Shown here piece after piece: positions 1,764-20,151 of a stretch of 64,000 nt of DNA. Where the stretch lies: sequence record NC_041917.1; one strand, 5' to 3'. The notes beneath the pieces were generated by a model, which was not told the DNA's origin, made no database searches, and was given only the letters and a program-made list of their open reading frames with translations. Within the stretch, counting starts at the first letter, position 1, and every line of letters starts with the position of its first letter. The position numbers and the translations under genes were made by a program.

Positions 1764-1879
1764 GCAGTGATCGTCTAGAGGCTTAGGACACGAAAAAGCG
1801 ATTCTTGGTTAAGAATCTTACGGCATCAATAAACTTTCATTTCACGAACGTAACGCAGGTTCGAATCCTGCTCACTGCA
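1764..1879 (+). tRNA. tRNA-Glu(UUC) interrupted by a 43-nt insertion (1793-1835)
   Basis: Acceptor GCAGTGA/TCACTGC; T-arm GCAGG-TTCGAAT-CCTGC; removing the insert gives CG|TTC-ATTTCAC-GAACG. Confidence 0.85.
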
Positions 1880-2209: not shown

Positions 2210-2335
2210 GTGGGGTTAGCTCAGTCTGGTAGAGCAGCGAAAGAAAAAACAATGGAATCTTGAAAAGGATTCTAACAGCATTATATCTTCTACTGTAAAT
2301 TCGCAGGTCGGTGAGTTCAAATCCACCATCCCACA
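2210..2335 (+). tRNA. tRNA-Tyr(GUA)-like gene interrupted by a ~51-nt insertion (2242-2292)
   Basis: Acceptor GTGGGGT/ATCCCAC; D-arm GCTC..GAGC; GCGAA|CTGTAAA-TTCGC after removal; short variable loop and bulged T-stem are atypical. Confidence 0.75.
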
Positions 2336-2683: not shown

Positions 2684-3049
2684 ATGAAAGTATTCATTGA
2701 TGATATTCGTGACCCAAAAAATTACTTGACACCAGAACAGGCTGATGGTATTATTTGGATCAAAGAGTGGTGGTCAGCAAAACGCTTTTTGATTGATCAT
2801 GCTGCTGAAATTGAAGTGATTCATTTTGACCATTACATGGATGAACCAACGTTAACTGGTAAAGATTTATTCTTTATGGTTGCTGGGGATTGTATGTGGG
2901 GTGGAAAAGAAACATGGATTAAACTACAGAAAATTTATTTACATTCTTCTGATGTTGATATGGTTGAAGAACTTGTTGAAGAATATAGTACTGAATTGGC
3001 TGAATCTGGTGTTGAGCTTATTGATAACCATCAAGAAAGGAACTACTAA
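2684..3049 (+). CDS. cyclic-phosphate-processing receiver-like domain protein
   Basis: KVFIDDIRDP ... IHFDHYMD ... GKDLF ... IYLHSS pattern recognised by eye. Confidence 0.6.
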   Translation: MKVFIDDIRDPKNYLTPEQADGIIWIKEWWSAKRFLIDHAAEIEVIHFDHYMDEPTLTGKDLFFMVAGDCMWGGKETWIKLQKIYLHSSDVDMVEELVEEYSTELAESGVELIDNHQERNY

Positions 3050-3406
3050 ATGAAAGTTTATGTAGATGATATTCGTAATCCACAAAACCATCTAAGTTCT
3101 GAACAGGCAGCCGATGTAGTGTGGATTAAAGAATGGTGGGATGCACGTAACTTTATCTTTTATAATAATTTAGAAATTGAAGTGATTCATTTAGATAATT
3201 ATCTAGGTGACCGTACCCACACTGGTGCTGATTTACTTCGAATGATTACATATAGGTTTCGCCGTGGGGAATTCCCTAAGTTGAAACAAATTTATCTTCA
3301 CAGTTCTGATAAAGATATTGTGAATAAACTGTATGACACACATATTGAATGTTGTACAGAAGCTGGTGTTGAATTAATTAAAAATTCACGTCCAAACCGT
3401 AGTTAA
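3050..3406 (+). CDS. cyclic-phosphate-processing receiver-like domain protein (paralogue)
   Basis: KVYVDDIRNP ... IHLDNYLG ... GADLL ... IYLHSS; tandem paralogue of 2684..3049. Confidence 0.6.
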   Translation: MKVYVDDIRNPQNHLSSEQAADVVWIKEWWDARNFIFYNNLEIEVIHLDNYLGDRTHTGADLLRMITYRFRRGEFPKLKQIYLHSSDKDIVNKLYDTHIECCTEAGVELIKNSRPNRS

Positions 3407-3412
3407 ACAAAT

Positions 3413-3537
3413 GGCGAGTTAGCTCAGTTGGTAGAGCACGTAGAAACCCAAGATTCAAGTACTTGAATCTTACAGCAACAATAACTCATACACTTTTAAT
3501 GTCGTGGTCGTTGGTTCGAATCCAACACTCGCCGCCA
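3413..3537 (+). tRNA. tRNA-Lys(UUU) interrupted by a 49-nt insertion (3441-3489)
   Basis: Acceptor GGCGAGT/ACTCGCC plus G-CCA; CG|ACA-CTTTTAA-TGTCG after removal; T-arm GTTGG-TTCGAAT-CCAAC. Confidence 0.9.
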
Positions 3538-3554
3538 AATAATAAGGAGTACAT

Positions 3555-3761
3555 ATGTTCCTTGATGAAATTAAATCTGTTCCATTCCCAAGCTATAAAG
3601 CTTTGGAAAAATCACGTAACGAATCGTCTAAGTCTGTTAATCCAACAACTTATGATCGTTATGAAAAGTACCATTATCCTGCTGGTACAGAATTCCGTTT
3701 AGCAAAAGCTATTGATTCTGTAATTGTAAAAATTAAAAAGGTAATTAACTATGTCGGTTAA
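3555..3761 (+). CDS. hypothetical protein
   Basis: AAGGAG RBS. Confidence 0.7.
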   Translation: MFLDEIKSVPFPSYKALEKSRNESSKSVNPTTYDRYEKYHYPAGTEFRLAKAIDSVIVKIKKVINYVG

Positions 3762-5775: not shown

Positions 5776-6237
5776 ATGGGTGCAATTATTCTGTACAGTA
5801 TTTTAGGTTTTCTCGGTGTATTCACTTTGTATATGTTCGTTGTAACATCTGCAATGGGTACTGAACGTTTAAAAACTTCACAGTACTTTATGTCTTCATT
5901 GAGTTATAGTGAAGAAGCTACAGTAAAAATCAATCTTTTGATTGATAAGTATCAAGCTGGCTTACTTAAAGCTAAGCTTAAATCAAATGTTATAGAATTC
6001 ACCGAAATGGAAGGTAATGCACTGGCTGGTGAGATTTATATTGCAAATAAGTACTTCTCGTATGGTCAGTTGTATCGTTATGGTGCAAATGGAAATACTA
6101 AGTGGCAATGCAATAAACCAGATTTAAAAACTTTCAAGCGTATTATTAAACTTGAAAAACAACTTGATATTACTGATGAAGTTCCAGTACAAAAAAGTAC
6201 TAGTAAGTCATCAGAAGAACAGGTTATTCTGGACTAA
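5776..6237 (+). CDS. membrane-anchored hypothetical protein
   Basis: N-terminal TM helix. Confidence 0.7.
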   Translation: MGAIILYSILGFLGVFTLYMFVVTSAMGTERLKTSQYFMSSLSYSEEATVKINLLIDKYQAGLLKAKLKSNVIEFTEMEGNALAGEIYIANKYFSYGQLYRYGANGNTKWQCNKPDLKTFKRIIKLEKQLDITDEVPVQKSTSKSSEEQVILD

Positions 6238-6957: not shown

Positions 6958-7363
6958 AATTATTTGTGGATTTCCTGGTATAGGTAAGAGTAGTATTAAA
7001 AATATCGGCAAAGTACTTGATTTGGATAGTTCTTTGTATACCAAGAATTCTTTATTTCCTGCTAATTATATTGTTGATATTGTATCTGCAATGGATGAAT
7101 ATGATTATATTTTGGTAAGTACGCATGACGTACTTAGAAAAGAATTACAATCATTGGGTATTAGTTATACTAATGTATATCCAGAGATTGATTTAGGTGA
7201 AGAATACCACGAACGTTATGTTCAACGCGGAAGTCCTGAAAGTTTTATTAATTTTATTGATGAAAATTGGGATGACTTCATATACGAATTGCAGTATGAT
7301 GATTCTGAATATGTTGAACTGGAAAGCGGTCAATTTCTTTCAGATATTATAGCAAATATTTGA
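6950..7363 (+). CDS. P-loop kinase/NTPase
   Basis: Walker A GFPGIGKS near N-terminus, small NMP-kinase-like size. Confidence 0.7.
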   Translation: MAKIICGFPGIGKSSIKNIGKVLDLDSSLYTKNSLFPANYIVDIVSAMDEYDYILVSTHDVLRKELQSLGISYTNVYPEIDLGEEYHERYVQRGSPESFINFIDENWDDFIYELQYDDSEYVELESGQFLSDIIANI

Positions 7364-7389
7364 AACGAAAGAAAAAATTGTGGTATAAT
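7361..7389 (+). promoter_or_regulatory. TGAAAC-N17-TATAAT promoter (RNA-gene class)
   Basis: TGAAAC ... TGGTATAAT; five more copies in the window. Confidence 0.7.
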
Positions 7390-7406: not shown

Positions 7407-7523
7407 GGAATCTTACAGCAAAAATACTAATTTTTGATGAAAACGAAACGACGAGGTTCGAATCCTCACCCACGAATTGCCTTATTATTAGTGGGAGCAC
7501 GGTGCTGGATAAACAAAGATTCC
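7407..7523 (+). ncRNA. ACAGCA element bracketing a degenerate permuted tRNA (Ile GAU-like)
   Basis: GGAATCTT-ACAGCA ... AAGATTCC; GAGG-TTCGAAT-CCTC precedes CCCAC..GTGGG. Confidence 0.7.
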
Positions 7524-7706: not shown

Positions 7707-7824
7707 GAAATCTCACAGCAAACAAAACAATTTTTTTCCTTGCATAGAAAAACGGTGGGGTTCGATTCCCCAACATCCAAGTTGCTTTTAGGATGTGTCT
7801 GGAAGGCCGTATGACAAAGATTTC
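7707..7824 (+). ncRNA. ACAGCA element bracketing a degenerate permuted tRNA (Ala UGC-like)
   Basis: GAAATCT-C-ACAGCA ... AGATTTC; CTTGCAT loop, GGGG-TTCGATT-CCCC, ACATCC..GGATGT. Confidence 0.7.
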
Positions 7825-8000
7825 AGTTCCTATCAACTAAAAAGGATAGCATATAATGAGTTCTGAAGAAAATTTAGAATTATTAAATAAAATAATGAAT
7901 GCCATTGCAAATGGTAAATTGAGTGAAACAATGACTGAACTTGGTTACGAAGTAACTAAGAGTACTGATAAAAGTACAGAATGGTCATTAAAACAATAAT

Positions 8001-8074
8001 GTTCTGTTAGACAAATTGGTAAAGTCACCACCCTTTCAAGGTGGGGTTTACGGGTTCGACCCCCGTACAGAACG
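8001..8074 (+). tRNA. tRNA-Glu(UUC)
   Basis: CCACC-CTTTCAA-GGTGG; acceptor GTTCTGT/ACAGAAC. Confidence 0.95.
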
Positions 8075-8079
8075 CTAAA

Positions 8080-8192
8080 GGATTCGCACAGCAACAATAA
8101 AATCTTAAAATTCAATTGGTGAAAACAACCTTGCAGTTCGATTCTGCTTCCACAATGTGTGGATCTGGTGATGGATAGAAAAAACCGAATCC
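8080..8192 (+). ncRNA. ACAGCA element bracketing a highly degenerate permuted tRNA
   Basis: GGATTCG-C-ACAGCA ... AGAAA..CGAATCC; GCAG-TTCGATT-CTGC then TCCAC-AATGT-GTGGA. Confidence 0.65.
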
Positions 8193-8231
8193 TGATTTTA
8201 ATTAAGAAGTACTAAAGAATTTGATACACAC

Positions 8232-8384
8232 GGATTTATACAGCAAACATAATCCTAAAATAAAACATACGATAATGTTACTAACTCGGAATTCGTTCCC
8301 TTCGTTAGTACTTGGCAACTTGGGTACTTAAATAAGTTGTATCACCTCACGTGTATCGGATTAGAGGTGATTATAAATAAATCC
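8232..8384 (+). ncRNA. ACAGCA element with multi-hairpin cargo
   Basis: GGATTTAT-ACAGCA ... ATAAATCC; internal GGAA-TTCG-TTCC, CAACTT/AAGTTG, ATCACCTC/GAGGTGAT. Confidence 0.65.
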
Positions 8385-8850: not shown

Positions 8851-8925
8851 GGGGTACGTAGCTCAGTCTGGTAGAGCAGCCATGCGAAAACGGTGTGTCG
8901 GTGGTTCGAATCCACTCGCTCCCCA
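8851..8925 (+). pseudogene. pseudo-tRNA (Phe GAA-like, damaged anticodon arm)
   Basis: Good D and T arms; acceptor has 2 mismatches; anticodon stem poorly paired around GCGAAAA. Confidence 0.5.
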
Positions 8926-8929
8926 CTAA

Positions 8930-8986
8930 GGAATCTAGCAGCAACCATAACCCAATCAAACTTTTAATTTGACAATTATGGATTCC
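8930..8986 (+). ncRNA. ACAGCA element carrying an isolated Lys(UUU) anticodon stem-loop
   Basis: GGAATCT-A-GCAGCA ... TCAAA-CTTTTAA-TTTGA ... GGATTCC. Confidence 0.75.
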
Positions 8987-9667: not shown

Positions 9668-10354
9668 ATGTCAAAAAAGACTGATAAAGAAGTAAAAGAT
9701 ACAAAAGAAAAGTACACTGTTGTTAAACACGGCTCACTAACACTAGTGAATACACCAACAGTAAAAACTTTCTATATGAATGGTTCTATTGATCATCCTA
9801 CATTAACTAAGTTCCAAAAGTTCTTAGAAGATACATGTACGGAAAATAATAAAATTGATACCGAAGAAACTGAACGCAAAGAAAAGGATGAATTTAAAAA
9901 GATTCATGATCCTGAATCTAAGCCAGAGTTTGTTCCTGCTAAACGTAAAGTTGAGCGTATCAATCTGGTTATCAATAGTGGTGGTGGTTTAGTTGCAGTA
10001 ATGCTAGAAGTTGTAGCACTAATGAAAACTTCACCAATTCCAATTGATACCTACTGTTTTGGTTCTGCAATGAGTGCAGCTTTCTTTATCTTCTTACATG
10101 GCAAACGCCGTTTTGTTGGTGAAGGTGCCTCATTTATGACACATAGCATTGGTGCTATGGCATGGGATAATGTACCAAACATGACAATTCGTATGGAGTA
10201 CTTGGTTAAACAAAACGAGTACGCACAACAGGAAATTGCTAAACGTACTGGAATTCCTCTTGAAAAATTAAAAGAGAAAGAACATCTCGATTGGTACTTG
10301 ACTGCTGAAGAAGCGTTAGATGTTAAAATCGGTGAATATTTGATCCGAGATTAA
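9668..10354 (+). CDS. clpP: ClpP-like serine protease
   Basis: INSGGG, AMSAA (catalytic Ser), MTHS (His), DWYLTAEEA. Confidence 0.85.
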   Translation: MSKKTDKEVKDTKEKYTVVKHGSLTLVNTPTVKTFYMNGSIDHPTLTKFQKFLEDTCTENNKIDTEETERKEKDEFKKIHDPESKPEFVPAKRKVERINLVINSGGGLVAVMLEVVALMKTSPIPIDTYCFGSAMSAAFFIFLHGKRRFVGEGASFMTHSIGAMAWDNVPNMTIRMEYLVKQNEYAQQEIAKRTGIPLEKLKEKEHLDWYLTAEEALDVKIGEYLIRD

Positions 10355-10400: not shown

Positions 10401-10625
10401 ATGGACAATCAACACAAACATATTAAAGGGTATCGTGACCTTTCACAAAAAGAAGTGGATGCGATGAATGAGATTAAACAACTGGCTGCCACCATTGGAG
10501 AGTTGATAGAAAAACTTGAAAGTACTGAATCAGTAGATAAACGTTGGCTTGCAATTGCAAAGACGGATTTACAAAAAGGATTCATGTCAGCAGTACGAAG
10601 TGTGGCTAAACCAGATTCCTTCTAA
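10401..10625 (+). CDS. acb2: anti-CBASS nucleotide sponge Acb2 (T4 Vs.4-like)
   Basis: MDNQHKHIKGYRDLSQ ... RWLAIAKTDLQKGFMSAVRSVAKPDSF closely follows the Acb2/Vs.4 signature. Confidence 0.9.
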   Translation: MDNQHKHIKGYRDLSQKEVDAMNEIKQLAATIGELIEKLESTESVDKRWLAIAKTDLQKGFMSAVRSVAKPDSF

Positions 10626-11015: not shown

Positions 11016-11023
11016 AAAAGTTT

Positions 11024-11077
11024 TAGAATCTAACAGCAATCAAAACTCATTGGATATATGAAAAAAGATAGATTCTA
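11024..11077 (+). ncRNA. minimal ACAGCA element
   Basis: TAGAATCTA-ACAGCA ... TCAT-TGGATAT-ATGA ... TAGATTCTA. Confidence 0.75.
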
Positions 11078-11083
11078 GTATTT

Positions 11084-11156: not shown

Positions 11157-11255
11157 CGAAGTAGTTCAGTACTGAAAAATGTACAGTGAAATTATTCAAC
11201 ACTATAGGTAGCACTTTGAATGAATCAGTAAGCCTATAAGTAACTACAATAAATT

Positions 11256-11384
11256 TGGAATTCAACAGCAATTCACTTACTAAAAACAGCTACCTCACGG
11301 TTTGTAGGTTCAAGTCCTACCTTGTACTTTCGAGTACATGTGGTGAAAATGGTAAACACGGCTGTCCAAAAGAAATGAATTCCA
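11256..11384 (+). tRNA. circularly permuted tRNA-Leu (probably UAA) inside an ACAGCA element
   Basis: 3' half (ACAGC, variable arm, T-arm, CTTGTAC) precedes TTTCGA linker and 5' half (GTACATG, D-arm, GCTGT). Confidence 0.85.
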
Positions 11385-11436
11385 GTATTAATTAAGACAT
11401 AAATATTCTTATACACTTTTTTGTAAGGATATAATT

Positions 11437-12036
11437 ATGGAAATGAAAAAGTTGATGGAAGATATTTCTGCCATCATGGAAGGACAACTACCTGGTTATT
11501 ATTATCATGGAAGTTCTGCCCCAATATCAAATTTTAGTGATGAGTTTGTTGGTAGAGGAAATGATGAATACGGTCCGGGAATATATTTTAGTTCAGTTCC
11601 AAATACTTCTATAGGTTATGCAAAAGATGGCGGTTCTAATGGAATGGTATATCAGTGCGAAATCAATTTAAGAAAAGAACTATCTAAAAAAACTAGAGTT
11701 AATAAAGCAGTACTATTAAAATTAATGCAAAATACACCTGATGAAGATGCATATACTAACTGGAATGAAAATAAAAATGTTGCTTATAGAACAGCATTAC
11801 AGGGTTATGTAGATGAAGGTAATATGTATGATGCGTTAATGGGTGTTTGGTACGATTGGTATAGAGAATATCCTGTTCAATTCGTGCGTTCACTAGTACA
11901 GTTAGGATATGATGGATACATATATACTTTTGCAAGCGGTGAACGTTTTATTATAGTATATAATCCAGCAAGTATAAAAGTTGTAAACACATTCAATCCA
12001 GAAGAAGCTATGCAGAAACTGATTGGAAGTGAATAA
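11437..12036 (+). CDS. ADP-ribosyltransferase-like protein
   Basis: YHGS ... GPGIYFS ... ERFIIVYNP pattern of ART-fold (ART-PolyVal-like) domains. Confidence 0.55.
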   Translation: MEMKKLMEDISAIMEGQLPGYYYHGSSAPISNFSDEFVGRGNDEYGPGIYFSSVPNTSIGYAKDGGSNGMVYQCEINLRKELSKKTRVNKAVLLKLMQNTPDEDAYTNWNENKNVAYRTALQGYVDEGNMYDALMGVWYDWYREYPVQFVRSLVQLGYDGYIYTFASGERFIIVYNPASIKVVNTFNPEEAMQKLIGSE

Positions 12037-12043
12037 TAAGATT

Positions 12044-12163
12044 TGGAATTCAACAGCAAATCATTCTAAACCCGTAGCATGTCGTAGGTTCAAGTCCTAC
12101 CAGTACTATCGAGTACTGTAGCTCAGTTGGTAGAGCAGCCACCTTAAAAAGAAATGAATTCCA
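12044..12163 (+). tRNA. circularly permuted class I tRNA inside an ACAGCA element (anticodon uncertain)
   Basis: GTAGC-ATGTC-T-arm-CAGTACT-ATCG-AGTACTG-TA-GCTCAGTTGGTAGAGC-A-GCCAC. Confidence 0.8.
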
Positions 12164-12194
12164 GTATTAATTAAAACAACATGAGTATAAATCA

Positions 12195-12644: not shown

Positions 12645-12653
12645 AACAAGTTT

Positions 12654-12718
12654 TGGAATCTAGCAGCACCCATAAAATGAAATCAACTGTTAATTGAAAA
12701 ATTCAAAAATGGATTCCA
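12654..12718 (+). ncRNA. ACAGCA element carrying an isolated Asn(GUU) anticodon stem-loop
   Basis: TGGAATCT-A-GCAGCA ... TCAA-CTGTTAA-TTGA ... GGATTCCA. Confidence 0.7.
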
Positions 12719-12738
12719 GCCTATTTCGGAGTAAAAAA

Positions 12739-13148: not shown

Positions 13149-13265
13149 CAAAAAGTTAAATTCACCAGGCGTACTATGGTGGGAAAGGTATCATGATACC
13201 AATTCGAATAGAATACGTATTAAACCCTTGAACGGTTTTCTGTAAACTCAATTTAACAAATAATT

Positions 13266-13320
13266 AAGAATCTAACAGCAATAAAAACTCATTCGATTAT
13301 ATGAAAAAAGATAGATTCTT
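13266..13320 (+). ncRNA. minimal ACAGCA element
   Basis: AAGAATCTA-ACAGCA ... TAGATTCTT; near copy of 11024-11077. Confidence 0.75.
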
Positions 13321-13325
13321 GTTTT

Positions 13326-13549: not shown

Positions 13550-13631
13550 GCGGGATTAGCTCAGTGGTAGAGCACTTGCCTTCCAAGCAAGAGGCGAATA
13601 GGTTCCATCGGTTCGAATCCGATATTCCGCT
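13550..13631 (+). tRNA. tRNA-Gly(UCC) with 15-nt variable region
   Basis: CTTGC-CTTCCAA-GCAAG; U73. Confidence 0.9.
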
Positions 13632-13749
13632 CAAACTAAACAAACAATAAGGTGATTTTTATGCTATAGAATCCTAGTACTGGTCCTCCTAAAGAATTTA
13701 ATTCTGATATAAACAACTCAAAATTAAACTACTATAGGAAGAACATACC

Positions 13750-14084: not shown

Positions 14085-14141
14085 AAGAATCCAGCAGCAA
14101 CTAAAACTCATTCGCTTAATATGAAAAAGAAACGGATTCTT
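14085..14141 (+). ncRNA. minimal ACAGCA element
   Basis: AAGAATCC-A-GCAGCA ... AGAAA-C-GGATTCTT. Confidence 0.75.
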
Positions 14142-20064: not shown

Positions 20065-20151
20065 GGGTCGTTCACTCAGTTGGTTAGAGTACCGGACTTT
20101 TAATCCGGCGGGTATATCCCATCGAAGGTTCGAATCCTTCACGGCCTACCA
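20065..20151 (+). tRNA. tRNA-Lys(UUU) with long variable arm
   Basis: CCGGA-CTTTTAA-TCCGG then GGG-TATAT-CCC arm; CCA. Confidence 0.9.

What the first reader, a model, noticed from the sequence alone, without database searches (positions are those of the whole stretch)
1764..1879. tRNA-Glu(UUC) with a 43-nt insertion between positions 28 and 29
Seen: removing 1793-1835 joins CG to TTC and gives a perfect anticodon arm, CGTTC-ATTTCAC-GAACG, in a gene with intact acceptor and T arms. The insert contains GATTCTT-GGTT-AAGAATC then TT-ACGGCA. The 28/29 position is the same as in the Lys gene at 3413, and is not the canonical 37/38 site. An intronless Glu(UUC) gene exists at 8001.
Basis: partly seen in the sequence, partly recalled or inferred. 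Interest (0 to 1): 0.8.

Follow-up and report, generated by a model that had tools for sequence, protein, structure and literature searches.

The report
Phage tRNA mimic carrying Y-RNA-like module
A giant phage carries tRNA genes split by a conserved 40-50-base RNA module; the same module also closes a dozen tRNA-like small RNAs, so it looks more like a protein-binding handle of the Y-RNA kind than an ordinary intron.

Summary
Window 1764-1879 (Serratia phage BF) is a complete Glu(UUC) cloverleaf with 43 extra bases (1793-1835) between positions 28 and 29. Sister genes lie at 2210-2335 (Tyr) and 3413-3537 (Lys). About 45 such genes occur in related and unrelated jumbo phages. All arms and the insert's hairpin covary strongly.

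The intron reading is only partly supported. The insert is a reusable module: a stem (GAWUC/GAWUC), a conserved single strand (NNRCRGCAW) and an A-rich opposite strand. In this window it also closes 11 other RNAs on the same strand. Five carry only an anticodon stem-loop. Five are permuted tRNA-like RNAs with a closed acceptor stem, which match Rfam YrlA below threshold. Removing the module from these cannot make a tRNA.

The phage encodes a Ro60-fold protein (BF_0180) two genes from an Rnl5-type RNA ligase. In other phage contigs, module RNAs lie beside Ro-like genes.

Best reading (about 0.45): a tRNA-shaped Y-like RNA whose module is a protein handle. Main rival (about 0.3): a new protein-spliced intron that leaves a duplex nick for the ligase; two cREC genes lie upstream of the Lys gene. 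No RNA data were available. I found no paper describing the module.

The parts
1764..1879 (+). Type-C gene: Glu(UUC)-type cloverleaf interrupted by the module. Not annotated in phage BF; called tRNA-Phe(aaa) in Erwinia phage pEa_SNUABM_12.
   Evidence: model R1 gives 105.2 bits; covariation.
1793..1835 (+). Inserted module (43 nt): A-rich strand J3 1793-1799, hairpin S 1800-1817, single strand J5 1818-1835.
   Evidence: The S stem and J5 core are as conserved as the tRNA exons.
1800..1817 (+). S hairpin: 7-bp stem with core GAUUC/GAAUC and loop GGUU.
   Evidence: MFE fold. RNAalifold predicts it independently. Five of 7 pairs covary.
1818..1827 (+). J5 core TTACGGCATC, an instance of NNRCRGCAW. 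The C, G, C and A are invariant in 30 of 30 genes.
   Evidence: columns 68-77. No conserved pairing partner found.
1836..1850 (+). Distal anticodon stem-loop (TTC / ATTTCAC / GAA) plus C42-G43.
2210..2335 (+). Second type-C gene, Tyr(GUA). Module at 2242-2292 (or 2241-2291). Stem GCGAA/TTCGC. S hairpin 2255-2272 has a flipped core, GAAUC/GAUUC.
   Evidence: (78.3 bits).
3413..3537 (+). Third type-C gene, Lys(UUU), with CCA encoded. Module 3441-3489; S hairpin 3452-3469.
   Evidence: Rfam tRNA 48.6 bits; 105.8 bits.
2684..3406 (+). Two tandem cREC genes (2684-3049 and 3050-3406; cyclic-phosphate processing receiver domain), ending 7 nt before the Lys type-C gene.
   Evidence: Pfam PF20274, E 6e-8 and 6e-11. 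The same order is kept in at least 15 related loci.
7407..7523 (+). Type-B RNA: the S stem (GGAAUC/GAUUCC) closes a cargo with a T arm and a closed acceptor-like hairpin. A sigma-70-like promoter lies at 7360-7389.
7707..7824 (+). Type-B RNA: S stem GAAAUC/GAUUUC, T arm, closed acceptor-like hairpin.
8079..8193 (+). Type-B RNA, starting 4 nt after the intact tRNA-Glu.
8930..8986 (+). Type-A RNA: the S stem closes only an anticodon stem-loop (5-bp stem, loop CUUUUAA, as in tRNA-Lys).
11023..11078 (+). Type-A RNA, 5 nt upstream of tRNA-Ile.
11255..11385 (+). Type-B RNA: T arm, acceptor closed by UUCG, D arm. The CBB orthologue covaries.
12043..12164 (+). Type-B RNA: permuted tRNA-like, with T arm, acceptor closed by AUCG and a canonical D arm.
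   Evidence: Rfam YrlA 40.3 bits, below the gathering score of 69; fold z-score -3.4.
12653..12719 (+). Type-A RNA: cargo with loop CUGUUAA, as in tRNA-Asn. Nearly identical in CBB.
13265..13321 (+). Type-A RNA, 4 nt upstream of tRNA-Gln.
14085..14141 (+). Type-A RNA.
8230..8296 (+). Degenerate or uncertain copy of the module (GAUUU AU ACAGCAA).
8001..8075 (+). Uninterrupted tRNA-Glu(UUC), the redundant intact copy.

Best explanation
The 43-nt insert is one copy of a reusable RNA module, which I call the S-module. It consists of a short stem with core GAWUC/GAWUC, a conserved single strand NNRCRGCAW directly 3' of the stem, and an A-rich strand on the other side.

In phage BF and its relatives the module is attached to pieces of tRNA in three topologies:
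- Type A: an anticodon stem-loop only.
- Type B: a tRNA 'elbow' with T arm, D arm and a closed acceptor stem. This is the YrlA / bacterial Y-RNA architecture.
- Type C: a whole cloverleaf with a free acceptor end. Here the module's stem is closed by a loop, so in the gene it looks like an intron in the 5' strand of the anticodon stem.

Type C is a circular permutation of the same architecture. I therefore read 1764-1879 as a tRNA-Glu-shaped member of a phage Y-RNA-like family.

Proposed mechanism:
- The module stays in the RNA and serves as the handle for a protein.
- The most likely protein is the phage's Ro60-fold protein BF_0180, encoded two genes from an Rnl5-type RNA ligase.
- The tRNA or anticodon part serves as bait or tether for tRNA-binding proteins. 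These could be host anticodon nucleases (decoy role) or the phage's own tRNA-repair enzymes (platform role).

Shown here: the module, its three topologies, its conservation and covariation, the Ro60 fold of BF_0180, the ligase family, and co-location of module RNAs with Ro-like genes in other phages.

Inferred: binding of the module to the Ro-like protein, retention of the module in the mature RNA, and the decoy or platform role.
For: Module reuse:
- The pattern GAWTCNNRCRGCAW (up to 1 mismatch) occurs 15 times in the window against 2.5 expected. Fourteen hits are on the + strand, all within 1.8-14.1 kb.
- In every case a partner strand closes a stem, either around a hairpin loop (3 type C) or around a tRNA-derived cargo. 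MFE folds of all ten type A/B elements use that stem.

Conservation:
- Across 30 type-C genes the S stem (0.73-0.76 identity) and the J5 core (0.70) are at least as conserved as the exons (0.63-0.66).
- Five of 7 S-stem pairs covary. One Lys gene has a fully swapped stem (AAUUAC/GUAAUU) but keeps J5.
- Type A/B elements are kept in phage CBB, a different genus, with compensatory changes.

Y-RNA likeness:
- Rfam YrlA matches type-B RNAs below threshold: 40.3 bits in the window, and 45.6, 35.4, 34.3 and 31.8 bits over the full model in other phages.

Ro-like partner:
- BF_0180 (DUF2828 + DUF7788) was modelled at pLDDT 88.9. Its ten best PDB matches are all Ro60/Rsr/TROVE structures (E 3e-10 to 3e-7, full length).
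- BF_0178, two genes upstream, is an RNA ligase of the DRB0094/Rnl5 family (233 bits against a cut-off of 151).

Linkage elsewhere:
- Loci fetched only by the RNA pattern hold Ro-like genes on the same strand within 0.2-5 kb: L146, L204, L176, L242.
- Among loci fetched by the protein, L362 has a promoter followed by two type-C genes and one type-B RNA within 900 nt downstream of the Ro-like gene. L341 has a type-B RNA 4.8 kb upstream.
- L146 is a full tRNA, including the anticodon arm, with the acceptor closed and the S stem open. That is the exact permutation of type C.

Redundancy and relaxed decoding:
- BF has intact Glu-UUC, Lys-UUU and Tyr-GUA genes.
- Orthologues switch anticodon (UUC to UCA or UUG; UUU to GAU or UUC) or carry 8-10-nt loops or A33.
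Against: - No RNA-level data exist, so retention of the module is not shown.
- In most type-C genes, removal restores an exact 5-bp stem and a canonical 7-nt loop with U33 and a fitting purine at 37, for example G37 in the Pro type. Several genes encode CCA. That is what a decoding tRNA precursor would look like.
- In BF itself the Ro-like gene is about 190 kb from these RNAs.
- Among 72 Ro-like loci outside the Rak2-like group, only one has type-C genes and a few have type-B RNAs. tRNA arrays and RNA-repair genes tend to cluster in large phages anyway, so the linkage is suggestive and not specific.
- The module lacks the GNCGAAN0-1G motif of YrlA, and no match reaches Rfam's gathering score.
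- The tandem cREC genes and the nick-sealing ligase fit a cut-and-rejoin pathway at least as well.
Confidence: 0.45

Rival explanations
1. The insert is a new kind of protein-spliced tRNA intron. An endonuclease recognises the S-module and cuts at the two helix junctions (28|J3 and J5|29). The two exons stay paired in the cloverleaf, leaving a nick in the duplex anticodon stem. The ends are healed (cREC, kinase/phosphatase) and the nick is sealed by the Rnl5-type ligase. The result is a working tRNA-Glu. Type A/B elements would then be other substrates of the same cutting enzyme, used as release cassettes.
For: - Exact restoration of a 5-bp stem and 7-nt loop in most of the 30 genes, with the insertion point always inside the 5' strand of the stem (28/29, 29/30, 30/31).
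- Canonical U33 and R37, and CCA encoded in the Lys genes and in the L362 genes.
- The distal anticodon stem covaries among orthologues: ACA/UGU, AGC/GCU, ACU/AGU, CCA/UGG.
- Two cREC genes lie directly upstream of a type-C gene in at least 15 loci.
- BF encodes an Rnl5-family ligase; by published biochemistry of DraRnl and NgrRnl this family seals nicks in duplex RNA. BF also encodes RlaP, a CCA-adding enzyme, a Macro domain, a 2H/Acb1-like protein, Nudix-cREC and PIN-PhoH.
- 'Enigmatic' introns have been reported in Lak megaphage tRNAs (bioRxiv 10.1101/356790).
Against: - No endonuclease has been identified.
- There is no BHB geometry, and J3 and J5 have no conserved pairing.
- Eleven of the 14 module copies in the window cannot yield a tRNA.
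- Acceptor-closed permutations such as L146 would need a circular intermediate.
- The interrupted genes are redundant with intact genes of the same anticodon in BF and CBB.
- Some orthologues have abnormal loops.
- The module's sequence is as conserved as the exons, which is unusual for a spacer that is discarded.
Confidence: 0.3
2. The module is a small self-cleaving (and perhaps self-ligating) ribozyme that excises itself or releases its cargo.
For: - There is a conserved single-stranded core next to a helix.
- J3 in the Lys and Tyr genes reads AGAAAC before a hairpin that is followed by UUAC, which loosely recalls loop B of the hairpin ribozyme (my own reading).
- The neighbouring cREC genes would fit 2',3'-cyclic phosphate ends.
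Against: - No Rfam ribozyme family matches, even at E up to 1-10.
- J3 is poorly conserved overall (0.34 identity), and the Glu-type J3 lacks AGAAAC.
- The order of elements differs from the hairpin ribozyme.
- The module is very small and has no conserved tertiary pairing.
Confidence: 0.05
3. The module is a punctuation or processing signal in polycistronic tRNA transcripts. It would be a site for a host RNase such as RNase E, or a stabilising end structure, with no partner of its own. The interrupted tRNAs would be by-products.
For: Type A/B elements abut tRNA genes by 4-8 nt. The elements lie on the transcribed strand only.
Against: A punctuation signal inside an anticodon stem would destroy the tRNA, yet these genes are kept with covariation across genera. 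Some type-B RNAs have their own promoters. The cargo is always tRNA-derived.
Confidence: 0.07
4. It is a dead tRNA gene disrupted by a selfish DNA insertion, i.e. a pseudogene, as annotated in BF and in fHe-Yen9-04.
For: Annotated as tRNA-Pseudo, tRNA-OTHER or tRNA-Undet in several records.
Against: All four tRNA helices and the S stem covary. There are about 45 homologues in several phage lineages. The insert is as conserved as the exons.
Confidence: 0.03

Closest known systems
YrlA / bacterial Y RNAs bound by Ro60 (Rsr) (Chen et al. 2014, PMC4201824; Rfam RF02553)
   Same: A tRNA-like domain (T arm, D arm, acceptor closed by a loop) hangs on a terminal stem that takes the place of the anticodon arm. 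A conserved motif sits on the 5' strand of that stem. There are several RNAs per genome. A Ro60-fold protein and an RNA ligase are in the same genome. In some phages the RNAs lie next to the Ro-like gene on the same strand.
   Different: The stem module has a different sequence (GAWUC + NNRCRGCAW, not GNCGAAN0-1G). Rfam scores stay below threshold. The Ro-like protein belongs to the DUF2828/DUF7788 family, not Pfam TROVE. The cargo can be an anticodon stem-loop alone or a complete cloverleaf with a free, sometimes CCA-ending, acceptor arm and a real anticodon loop; I did not find either described for Y RNAs. In BF the protein gene is about 190 kb away.
Archaeal and eukaryal protein-spliced tRNA introns, including non-canonical positions (BHB motif, EndA/TSEN, RtcB or Trl1)
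   Same: A short insert without a ribozyme core. It can sit in the anticodon stem. Removal restores the cloverleaf. Healing and sealing enzymes are encoded by the phage.
   Different: There is no bulge-helix-bulge. Both junctions lie at the same step of the helix. The host is a bacterium and the carrier is a phage. The insert has a conserved sequence shared with RNAs that are not tRNAs.
Bacterial and phage group I introns in tRNA anticodon loops
   Same: They interrupt tRNA genes in bacteria and phages.
   Different: Those introns are at least about 200 nt, have a catalytic core and sit in the loop. This insert is 38-51 nt, sits in the stem, and gives no Rfam group I match.
'Enigmatic' tRNA introns of Lak megaphages (Devoto et al., bioRxiv 10.1101/356790)
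   Same: Oversized tRNA genes of huge phages, called pseudo or undetermined by tRNAscan, with highly conserved inserts of unknown mechanism.
   Different: Different phages and hosts. I could not compare their insert sequences and positions with the S-module. That work reports no link to Y-like RNAs.
Permuted and split tRNA genes (Cyanidioschyzon merolae, Nanoarchaeum equitans)
   Same: The 3' half comes before the 5' half, with a stem formed by leader and trailer, as in type B and in L146.
   Different: Those use BHB processing and give decoding tRNAs. Most type-B RNAs here lack an anticodon loop altogether.
Phage T4 tRNA repair (PrrC against Pnkp/Rnl1) and phage tRNAs that counter tRNA-cutting defences
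   Same: The anticodons displayed (Lys UUU, Glu UUC, Tyr GUA, Asn GUU, Asp GUC, Gln UUG) are classic targets of anticodon nucleases. The region also holds anti-defence genes (Acb2/Tad1, ART).
   Different: Those systems use ordinary tRNAs and enzymes. A dedicated family of handle-bearing tRNA mimics has not been described, as far as I could find.

Membership tests
Canonical tRNA (Glu) | 7-bp acceptor stem, D arm, T arm with GTTCGAATC loop region, discriminator | tested here: met
   acceptor 99.5% paired and T stem 99.3% paired across 30 homologues.
Canonical tRNA (Glu) | Contiguous 5-bp anticodon stem; detected by standard tRNA finders | tested here: not met
   The stem is interrupted after position 28. 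ARAGORN finds nothing there. The Rfam tRNA model gives no hit at E<=1 for 1764-1879.
BHB-type (archaeal/eukaryal) tRNA intron | Two 3-nt bulges separated by a 4-bp helix that carry the two splice sites | tested here: not met
   Both junctions flank adjacent base pairs (28:42 and 29:41). The exon ends have no complement in the intron ends (reading). RNAalifold finds no J3/J5 pairing.
BHB-type (archaeal/eukaryal) tRNA intron | A splicing endonuclease (EndA/TSEN) in the genome | not tested
   Only about 50 BF proteins were scanned with Pfam. None was EndA. The whole proteome was not scanned.
Group I intron in tRNA | Catalytic core (P3-P9) of about 200 nt or more, located in the anticodon loop | tested here: not met
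   The insert is 43 nt and sits in the stem. No Intron_gpI match was found.
YrlA / bacterial Y RNA | tRNA-like domain: T arm, acceptor-like stem closed by a loop, D arm | tested here: inconclusive
   Met by the type-B relatives. In the RNA of the finding the acceptor is open and the module stem is closed, i.e. the circular permutation.
YrlA / bacterial Y RNA | Reaches Rfam RF02553 gathering score (69 bits) | tested here: not met
   Best scores are 40.3 bits (window 12077-12139) and 45.6 bits (L146). There is no YrlA hit at 1764-1879.
YrlA / bacterial Y RNA | [quoted passage not shown] | tested here: not met
   The module reads GAWUC NN RCRGCAW instead.
YrlA / bacterial Y RNA | Encoded within about 4 kb of a Ro60 orthologue on the same strand | tested here: inconclusive
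   Not met in BF, where the Ro-fold gene BF_0180 is about 190 kb away. Met for module RNAs in L146, L204, L176 and L362. Only a minority of 72 Ro-like loci show it.
YrlA / bacterial Y RNA | Bound by Ro60/Rsr | not testable with these tools
   Needs gel shift or RIP with BF_0180.
Ro60/TROVE protein (for BF_0180) | Helical-repeat ring plus vWA domain with a MIDAS motif | tested here: met
   AF2 pLDDT 88.9. The Foldseek top 10 are all Ro60/Rsr/TROVE, E down to 2.9e-10 and TM up to 0.58. There is a VWA_2 signal and an invariant D-x-S-x-S. Pfam TROVE itself is not matched by sequence.
Rnl5 (DRB0094) RNA ligase (for BF_0178) | N-terminal OB domain plus nucleotidyltransferase domain; TIGR02306 equivalog | tested here: met
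   PF21189 and PF09414. TIGR02306 scores 233.5 bits against a cut-off of 151. Nick-sealing activity is taken from published work on DraRnl and NgrRnl and was not tested here.

The most novel reading that the evidence does not exclude
The S-module is a new class of protein-dependent intron of bacterial viruses. It sits in the duplex anticodon stem and is cut out at the helix junctions. The resulting nick is sealed by an Rnl5-type nick-sealing RNA ligase, with cREC proteins healing the ends and a Ro60-like protein holding the precursor. This would give phages a gated supply of Glu, Lys and Tyr tRNAs that host anticodon nucleases cannot recognise until they are spliced. It would also make the acceptor-closed versions (for example L146) the first permuted tRNA genes of a virus, matured through circular intermediates.
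Probability: 0.25. Interest if true: 0.92.

Novelty: new variant of a known kind. Interest (0 to 1): 0.8.

Why it matters
If the handle reading is right, jumbo phages carry a whole toolkit of Y-RNA-like molecules that display chosen pieces of tRNA on a common protein-binding module. The pieces include full, possibly chargeable tRNAs. That would:
- extend Ro60/Y-RNA biology to a very large, unrecognised phage protein family (DUF2828/DUF7788, thousands of members);
- explain many 'pseudo' or 'undetermined' tRNA calls in phage genomes;
- point to a new layer in the conflict over tRNAs between phages and bacterial anticodon nucleases.

If the intron reading is right, it would be the first protein-spliced tRNA intron system in the bacterial world, and it would give nick-sealing RNA ligases a natural substrate.

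Either way the question is directly testable with a Northern blot and a gel shift.

Tried and rejected
- Known RNA families. Rfam at permissive thresholds gave no family for the module, no ribozyme and no group I intron.
- BHB geometry. Rejected by reading the junctions and by RNAalifold.
- Pairing of the conserved ACAGCAA with a complementary sequence elsewhere. There is no enrichment of UUGCUGU on the + strand.
- The MFE pairing UUACG/CGUAA in the Glu RNA. It is not kept in orthologues such as Kaldavass.
- Hfq-type ARN repeats, K-turn, MotA-box promoter and MITE-like DNA element. I considered these by eye and dropped them because they are not conserved across copies or lie on the wrong strand.
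- Neighbouring small ORFs. Pfam, PHROGs and NCBIfam gave no function except cREC.
- The tandem 120-aa ORFs in L065. They are not cREC-like.
- Bacterial and archaeal genomes. The type-C pattern gave only 3 chance hits in 185,579 species genomes.
- The first two viral-contig patterns were too loose. Most hits were chance and had to be filtered.
- Literature. Searches found no description of this module and no transcriptome for these phages. One search was wasted on a badly chosen term. The Burroughs & Aravind 2016 paper is not held.
Full report
**Source and observation.** The window is the last 64 kb of Serratia phage BF (KY630187, Eneladusvirus, a 357-kb Rak2-like jumbo phage). Window position 1400 equals record position 294554.

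The layout of 1764-1879 is:
- acceptor 1764-1770 paired with 1872-1878;
- a Glu-type D arm;
- C27-G28 at 1791-1792;
- 43 extra bases at 1793-1835;
- TTC, then loop ATTTCAC (anticodon TTC at 1841-1843), then GAA-CG;
- a 4-nt variable region, a canonical T arm, and discriminator A.

The boundaries cannot slide. ARAGORN finds 21 tRNAs in the window but not this gene. Rfam's tRNA model also misses it, although it finds the sister Lys gene at 3413-3534 (48.6 bits). BF does not annotate the gene. Other records call its orthologues tRNA-Phe(aaa), tRNA-OTHER or tRNA-Pseudo.

**More copies.** A fourth lies upstream of the window in BF (L245 22107-22225).

Orthologues exist in:
- Eneladusvirus (BF, the pEa_SNUABM phages, fHe-Yen9-04);
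- Mimasvirus (CBB, GAP32, XbC2) and Kaldavass;
- uncultured phage contigs of 174-371 kb.

A covariance model of the whole architecture (R1) gives 78-106 bits for 30 such genes, against at most 49 bits for ordinary tRNAs. It found about 28 further full-length matches in metagenome loci, some of them duplicates.

**Selection.**
- On the 30-gene alignment, 93.9% of cells are paired. Shuffles give 72.7% and slid partners give 40-52%.
- 23 of 28 pairs change on both sides. Acceptor, D, T and insert-hairpin helices all covary.
- RNAalifold recovers the same helices without being told.
- Removing the insert restores a perfect 5-bp anticodon stem and 7-nt loop in most genes.
- The insertion point is 28/29 in most genes, 29/30 in the XbC2_b class, and 30/31 or 31/32 in the Tyr class.
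- The anticodon loops are those of Glu, Lys, Tyr, Asp, Pro, Gln, Ile, Met, Gly and Thr tRNAs, and of UCA.

So this is not a decaying pseudogene.

**What the insert is.** It has three parts:
- an A-rich 5' strand (J3), poorly conserved (0.34 identity);
- a hairpin (S) with stem core GAWUC/GAWUC;
- a 3' single strand (J5) whose first ten bases read NNRCRGCAW, with C, G, C and A invariant in 30 of 30 genes.

The S stem (0.73-0.76) and the J5 core (0.70) are as conserved as the tRNA exons (0.63-0.66). Nothing pairs with J5.

**Reuse outside cloverleaves.** This was the key finding. The pattern GAWTCNNRCRGCAW (up to 1 mismatch) occurs 15 times in the window against 2.5 expected. Fourteen hits are on the + strand and all lie between 1.8 and 14.1 kb. 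In the 11 copies outside the three cloverleaf genes, the strand before J5 pairs with a strand 40-115 nt downstream rather than upstream. The S stem therefore closes a cargo, and all ten folds tested use that stem.

- Five cargoes are just an anticodon stem-loop ('type A'). Examples are loop CUUUUAA at 8930-8986 and loop CUGUUAA at 12653-12719. These are identical to the Lys and Asn anticodon loops of E. coli tRNAs (from my knowledge of those sequences).
- Five are permuted tRNA-like RNAs with a T arm, an acceptor stem closed by a small loop, and a D arm ('type B'): 7407-7523, 7707-7824, 8079-8193, 11255-11385 and 12043-12164.
- One further copy, at 8230-8296, is degenerate.

The cloverleaf genes ('type C') are the circular permutation of this architecture, with the acceptor open and the S stem closed.

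Phage CBB keeps orthologous type A and B elements with compensatory changes. Some type-B RNAs have their own extended -10 promoters.

**Y-RNA likeness.** Type B has the architecture of YrlA, the tRNA-like bacterial Y RNA that binds Ro60/Rsr (PMC4201824). Rfam's YrlA model matches below its threshold: 40.3 bits in the window, and 45.6, 35.4, 34.3 and 31.8 bits over the full model in other phages. The terminal stem module differs from YrlA's and lacks the GNCGAA motif.

**A Ro60-like protein in the phage.** BF_0180 is 508 aa with DUF2828 + DUF7788. Its GAP32 homologue is named 'RNA-binding protein'. It was modelled with pLDDT 88.9 and pTM 0.87. Its ten best PDB matches are all Ro60, Rsr or TROVE structures (E 2.9e-10 to 3.1e-7, full-length alignments, TM up to 0.58). 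They include a Thermus phage Ro60. Only vWA domains follow.

Two genes upstream lies BF_0178, an RNA ligase of the DRB0094/Rnl5 family. By published biochemistry this family seals nicks in duplex RNA.

BF also encodes:
- RlaP, a CCA-adding enzyme and a Macro domain protein;
- a 2H/Acb1-like protein and a Nudix-cREC fusion;
- PIN-PhoH, Sir2, TyrRS and a Thg1-like enzyme (PMC9503650, PMC7824862).

**Linkage in other phages.**
- Four loci that I had fetched only by the RNA pattern turned out to hold a homologue of BF_0180 on the same strand: L146 (RNA about 200 nt upstream), L204 (about 0.7 kb downstream), L176 (2.5 kb) and L242 (5 kb).
- L146 is a complete tRNA, including an anticodon arm, with a closed acceptor and an open S stem.
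- Going the other way, in 80 loci fetched by the protein, the layout stem + J5 motif + T-loop cargo + stem occurs 14 times on the protein's strand and once on the other strand. That asymmetry partly reflects tRNA gene orientation.
- Clear cases are L341 and L362. In L362 a promoter, two type-C genes (Thr-like and Gly-like, both ending in CCA) and a type-B RNA follow the Ro-like gene within 900 nt.
- Only one of the 72 loci outside the Rak2-like group has type-C genes. In BF the protein gene is about 190 kb from the RNAs. I therefore rate the linkage as suggestive.

**Evidence for splicing.**
- The two ORFs directly upstream of the Lys gene (2684-3049, 3050-3406) are cREC domains (PF20274), predicted to process cyclic phosphate RNA ends (PMC9503650). 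This order is kept in every related locus I hold.
- Excision from inside a stem would leave a nick in duplex RNA, the preferred substrate of Rnl5-type ligases.
- The anticodon loops are mostly canonical, and several genes encode CCA.

**Evidence against splicing.**
- Most module copies cannot yield a tRNA.
- The interrupted genes duplicate intact Glu-UUC (8001), Lys-UUU (20065) and Tyr-GUA (22449) genes. The same holds in CBB.
- Orthologues change anticodon or carry 8-10-nt loops or A33.
- No endonuclease or BHB motif was found.

**Distribution and literature.** The type-C pattern is absent from 185,579 bacterial and archaeal species genomes; the 3 hits are chance. It is present in phage-like metagenome contigs. 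Genome papers on these phages treat the genes as pseudo-tRNAs or ordinary tRNAs (PMC5259590, PMC7760394). The Lak megaphage preprint reports 'enigmatic' tRNA introns without a mechanism. I found no description of this module.

**Verdict.** The insert is a conserved functional module shared by a family of tRNA-derived small RNAs.
- Most likely (about 0.45): it is a protein handle, and 1764-1879 encodes a tRNA-Glu-shaped Y-like RNA that works with the phage's Ro60-like protein and RNA-repair enzymes. The plausible setting is the conflict with host tRNA-cutting defences.
- Main rival (about 0.3): a protein-spliced intron.
- No RNA-level data were available, so the choice between the two rests on inference.

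Noticed in passing
It is unannotated in BF. The insert lies at 30/31 or 31/32, and the module stem has a flipped core (GAAUC/GAUUC).
   Followed up: yes
L245 22107-22225 (BF record about 277.1 kb, outside the window): A fourth interrupted tRNA-like gene in BF: stem ACG+GC/GCCGU, loop AUAGGGA, S stem AAAUUC/GAAUUU. Unannotated.
   Followed up: partly
window 13550-13632 and 20065-20151: tRNA-Gly(UCC) of 83 nt and tRNA-Lys(UUU) of 87 nt carry unusually long variable regions. In the Lys gene this is a GGGUAUAUCCC hairpin. Both are odd for class I tRNAs.
   Followed up: no
window 8852-8924: Rfam calls a tRNA here (36.4 bits) that ARAGORN misses. Its anticodon region looks abnormal. BF annotates it as tRNA-Ser.
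   Followed up: no
window 10401-10625, 11437-12036, 9668-10354: Acb2/Tad1-hairpin protein (anti-CBASS/Thoeris sponge family), an ART-PolyVal ADP-ribosyltransferase sitting between two type-B RNAs, and a ClpP-like protease. The tRNA region doubles as an anti-defence island.
   Followed up: partly
L006 2401-2478 (XbC2 'tRNA-Glu') and L007 2670-2746 (Kaldavass 'tRNA-Lys'): tRNA-like genes whose anticodon arm is replaced by a long hairpin, capped by a UUCG loop in the XbC2 gene (the Kaldavass loop was not worked out). They are not decoding tRNAs despite their annotation.
   Followed up: no
L004 1612-1725; L007 2018-2130; L006 1747-1859; L150 10365-10476: Orthologues of the Glu gene read UCA (opal-suppressor type) or have 8-nt anticodon loops. 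L277 reads UUG. The anticodon is evolving fast in this lineage.
   Followed up: partly
L161 3390-3528 and 4686-4862; L176 8003-8153; L205 5906-6046: The two L161 genes are oversized tRNA genes (139 and 177 nt) with inserts of a different kind and no S-module. The L176 and L205 stretches (151 and 141 nt) were later read as an ordinary tRNA followed by a type-B S-module RNA.
   Followed up: no
L065 667-1085 and 3067-3353; L161 8977-9405: Sub-threshold GOLLD RNA matches (85 and 78 bits against a gathering score of 150) and a permuted tmRNA (68 bits, above threshold) lie in the same phage tRNA arrays that carry interrupted tRNAs.
   Followed up: no
L168 about 3450-3580, L176 about 7950-8070, L205 about 5980-6090: T4-sized (about 174 kb) phage contigs carry a type-B S-module RNA with a very short (3-bp) closed acceptor mimic. 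The module therefore reaches beyond jumbo phages.
   Followed up: partly
L253 7277-8803 (BF_0180) and its family: The DUF2828/DUF7788 family has over 7,500 clusters at E<=1e-5, mostly phage-like metagenome proteins. It has a Ro60 fold but is not recognised as TROVE by sequence. Most of its members may have unrecognised RNA partners.
   Followed up: partly
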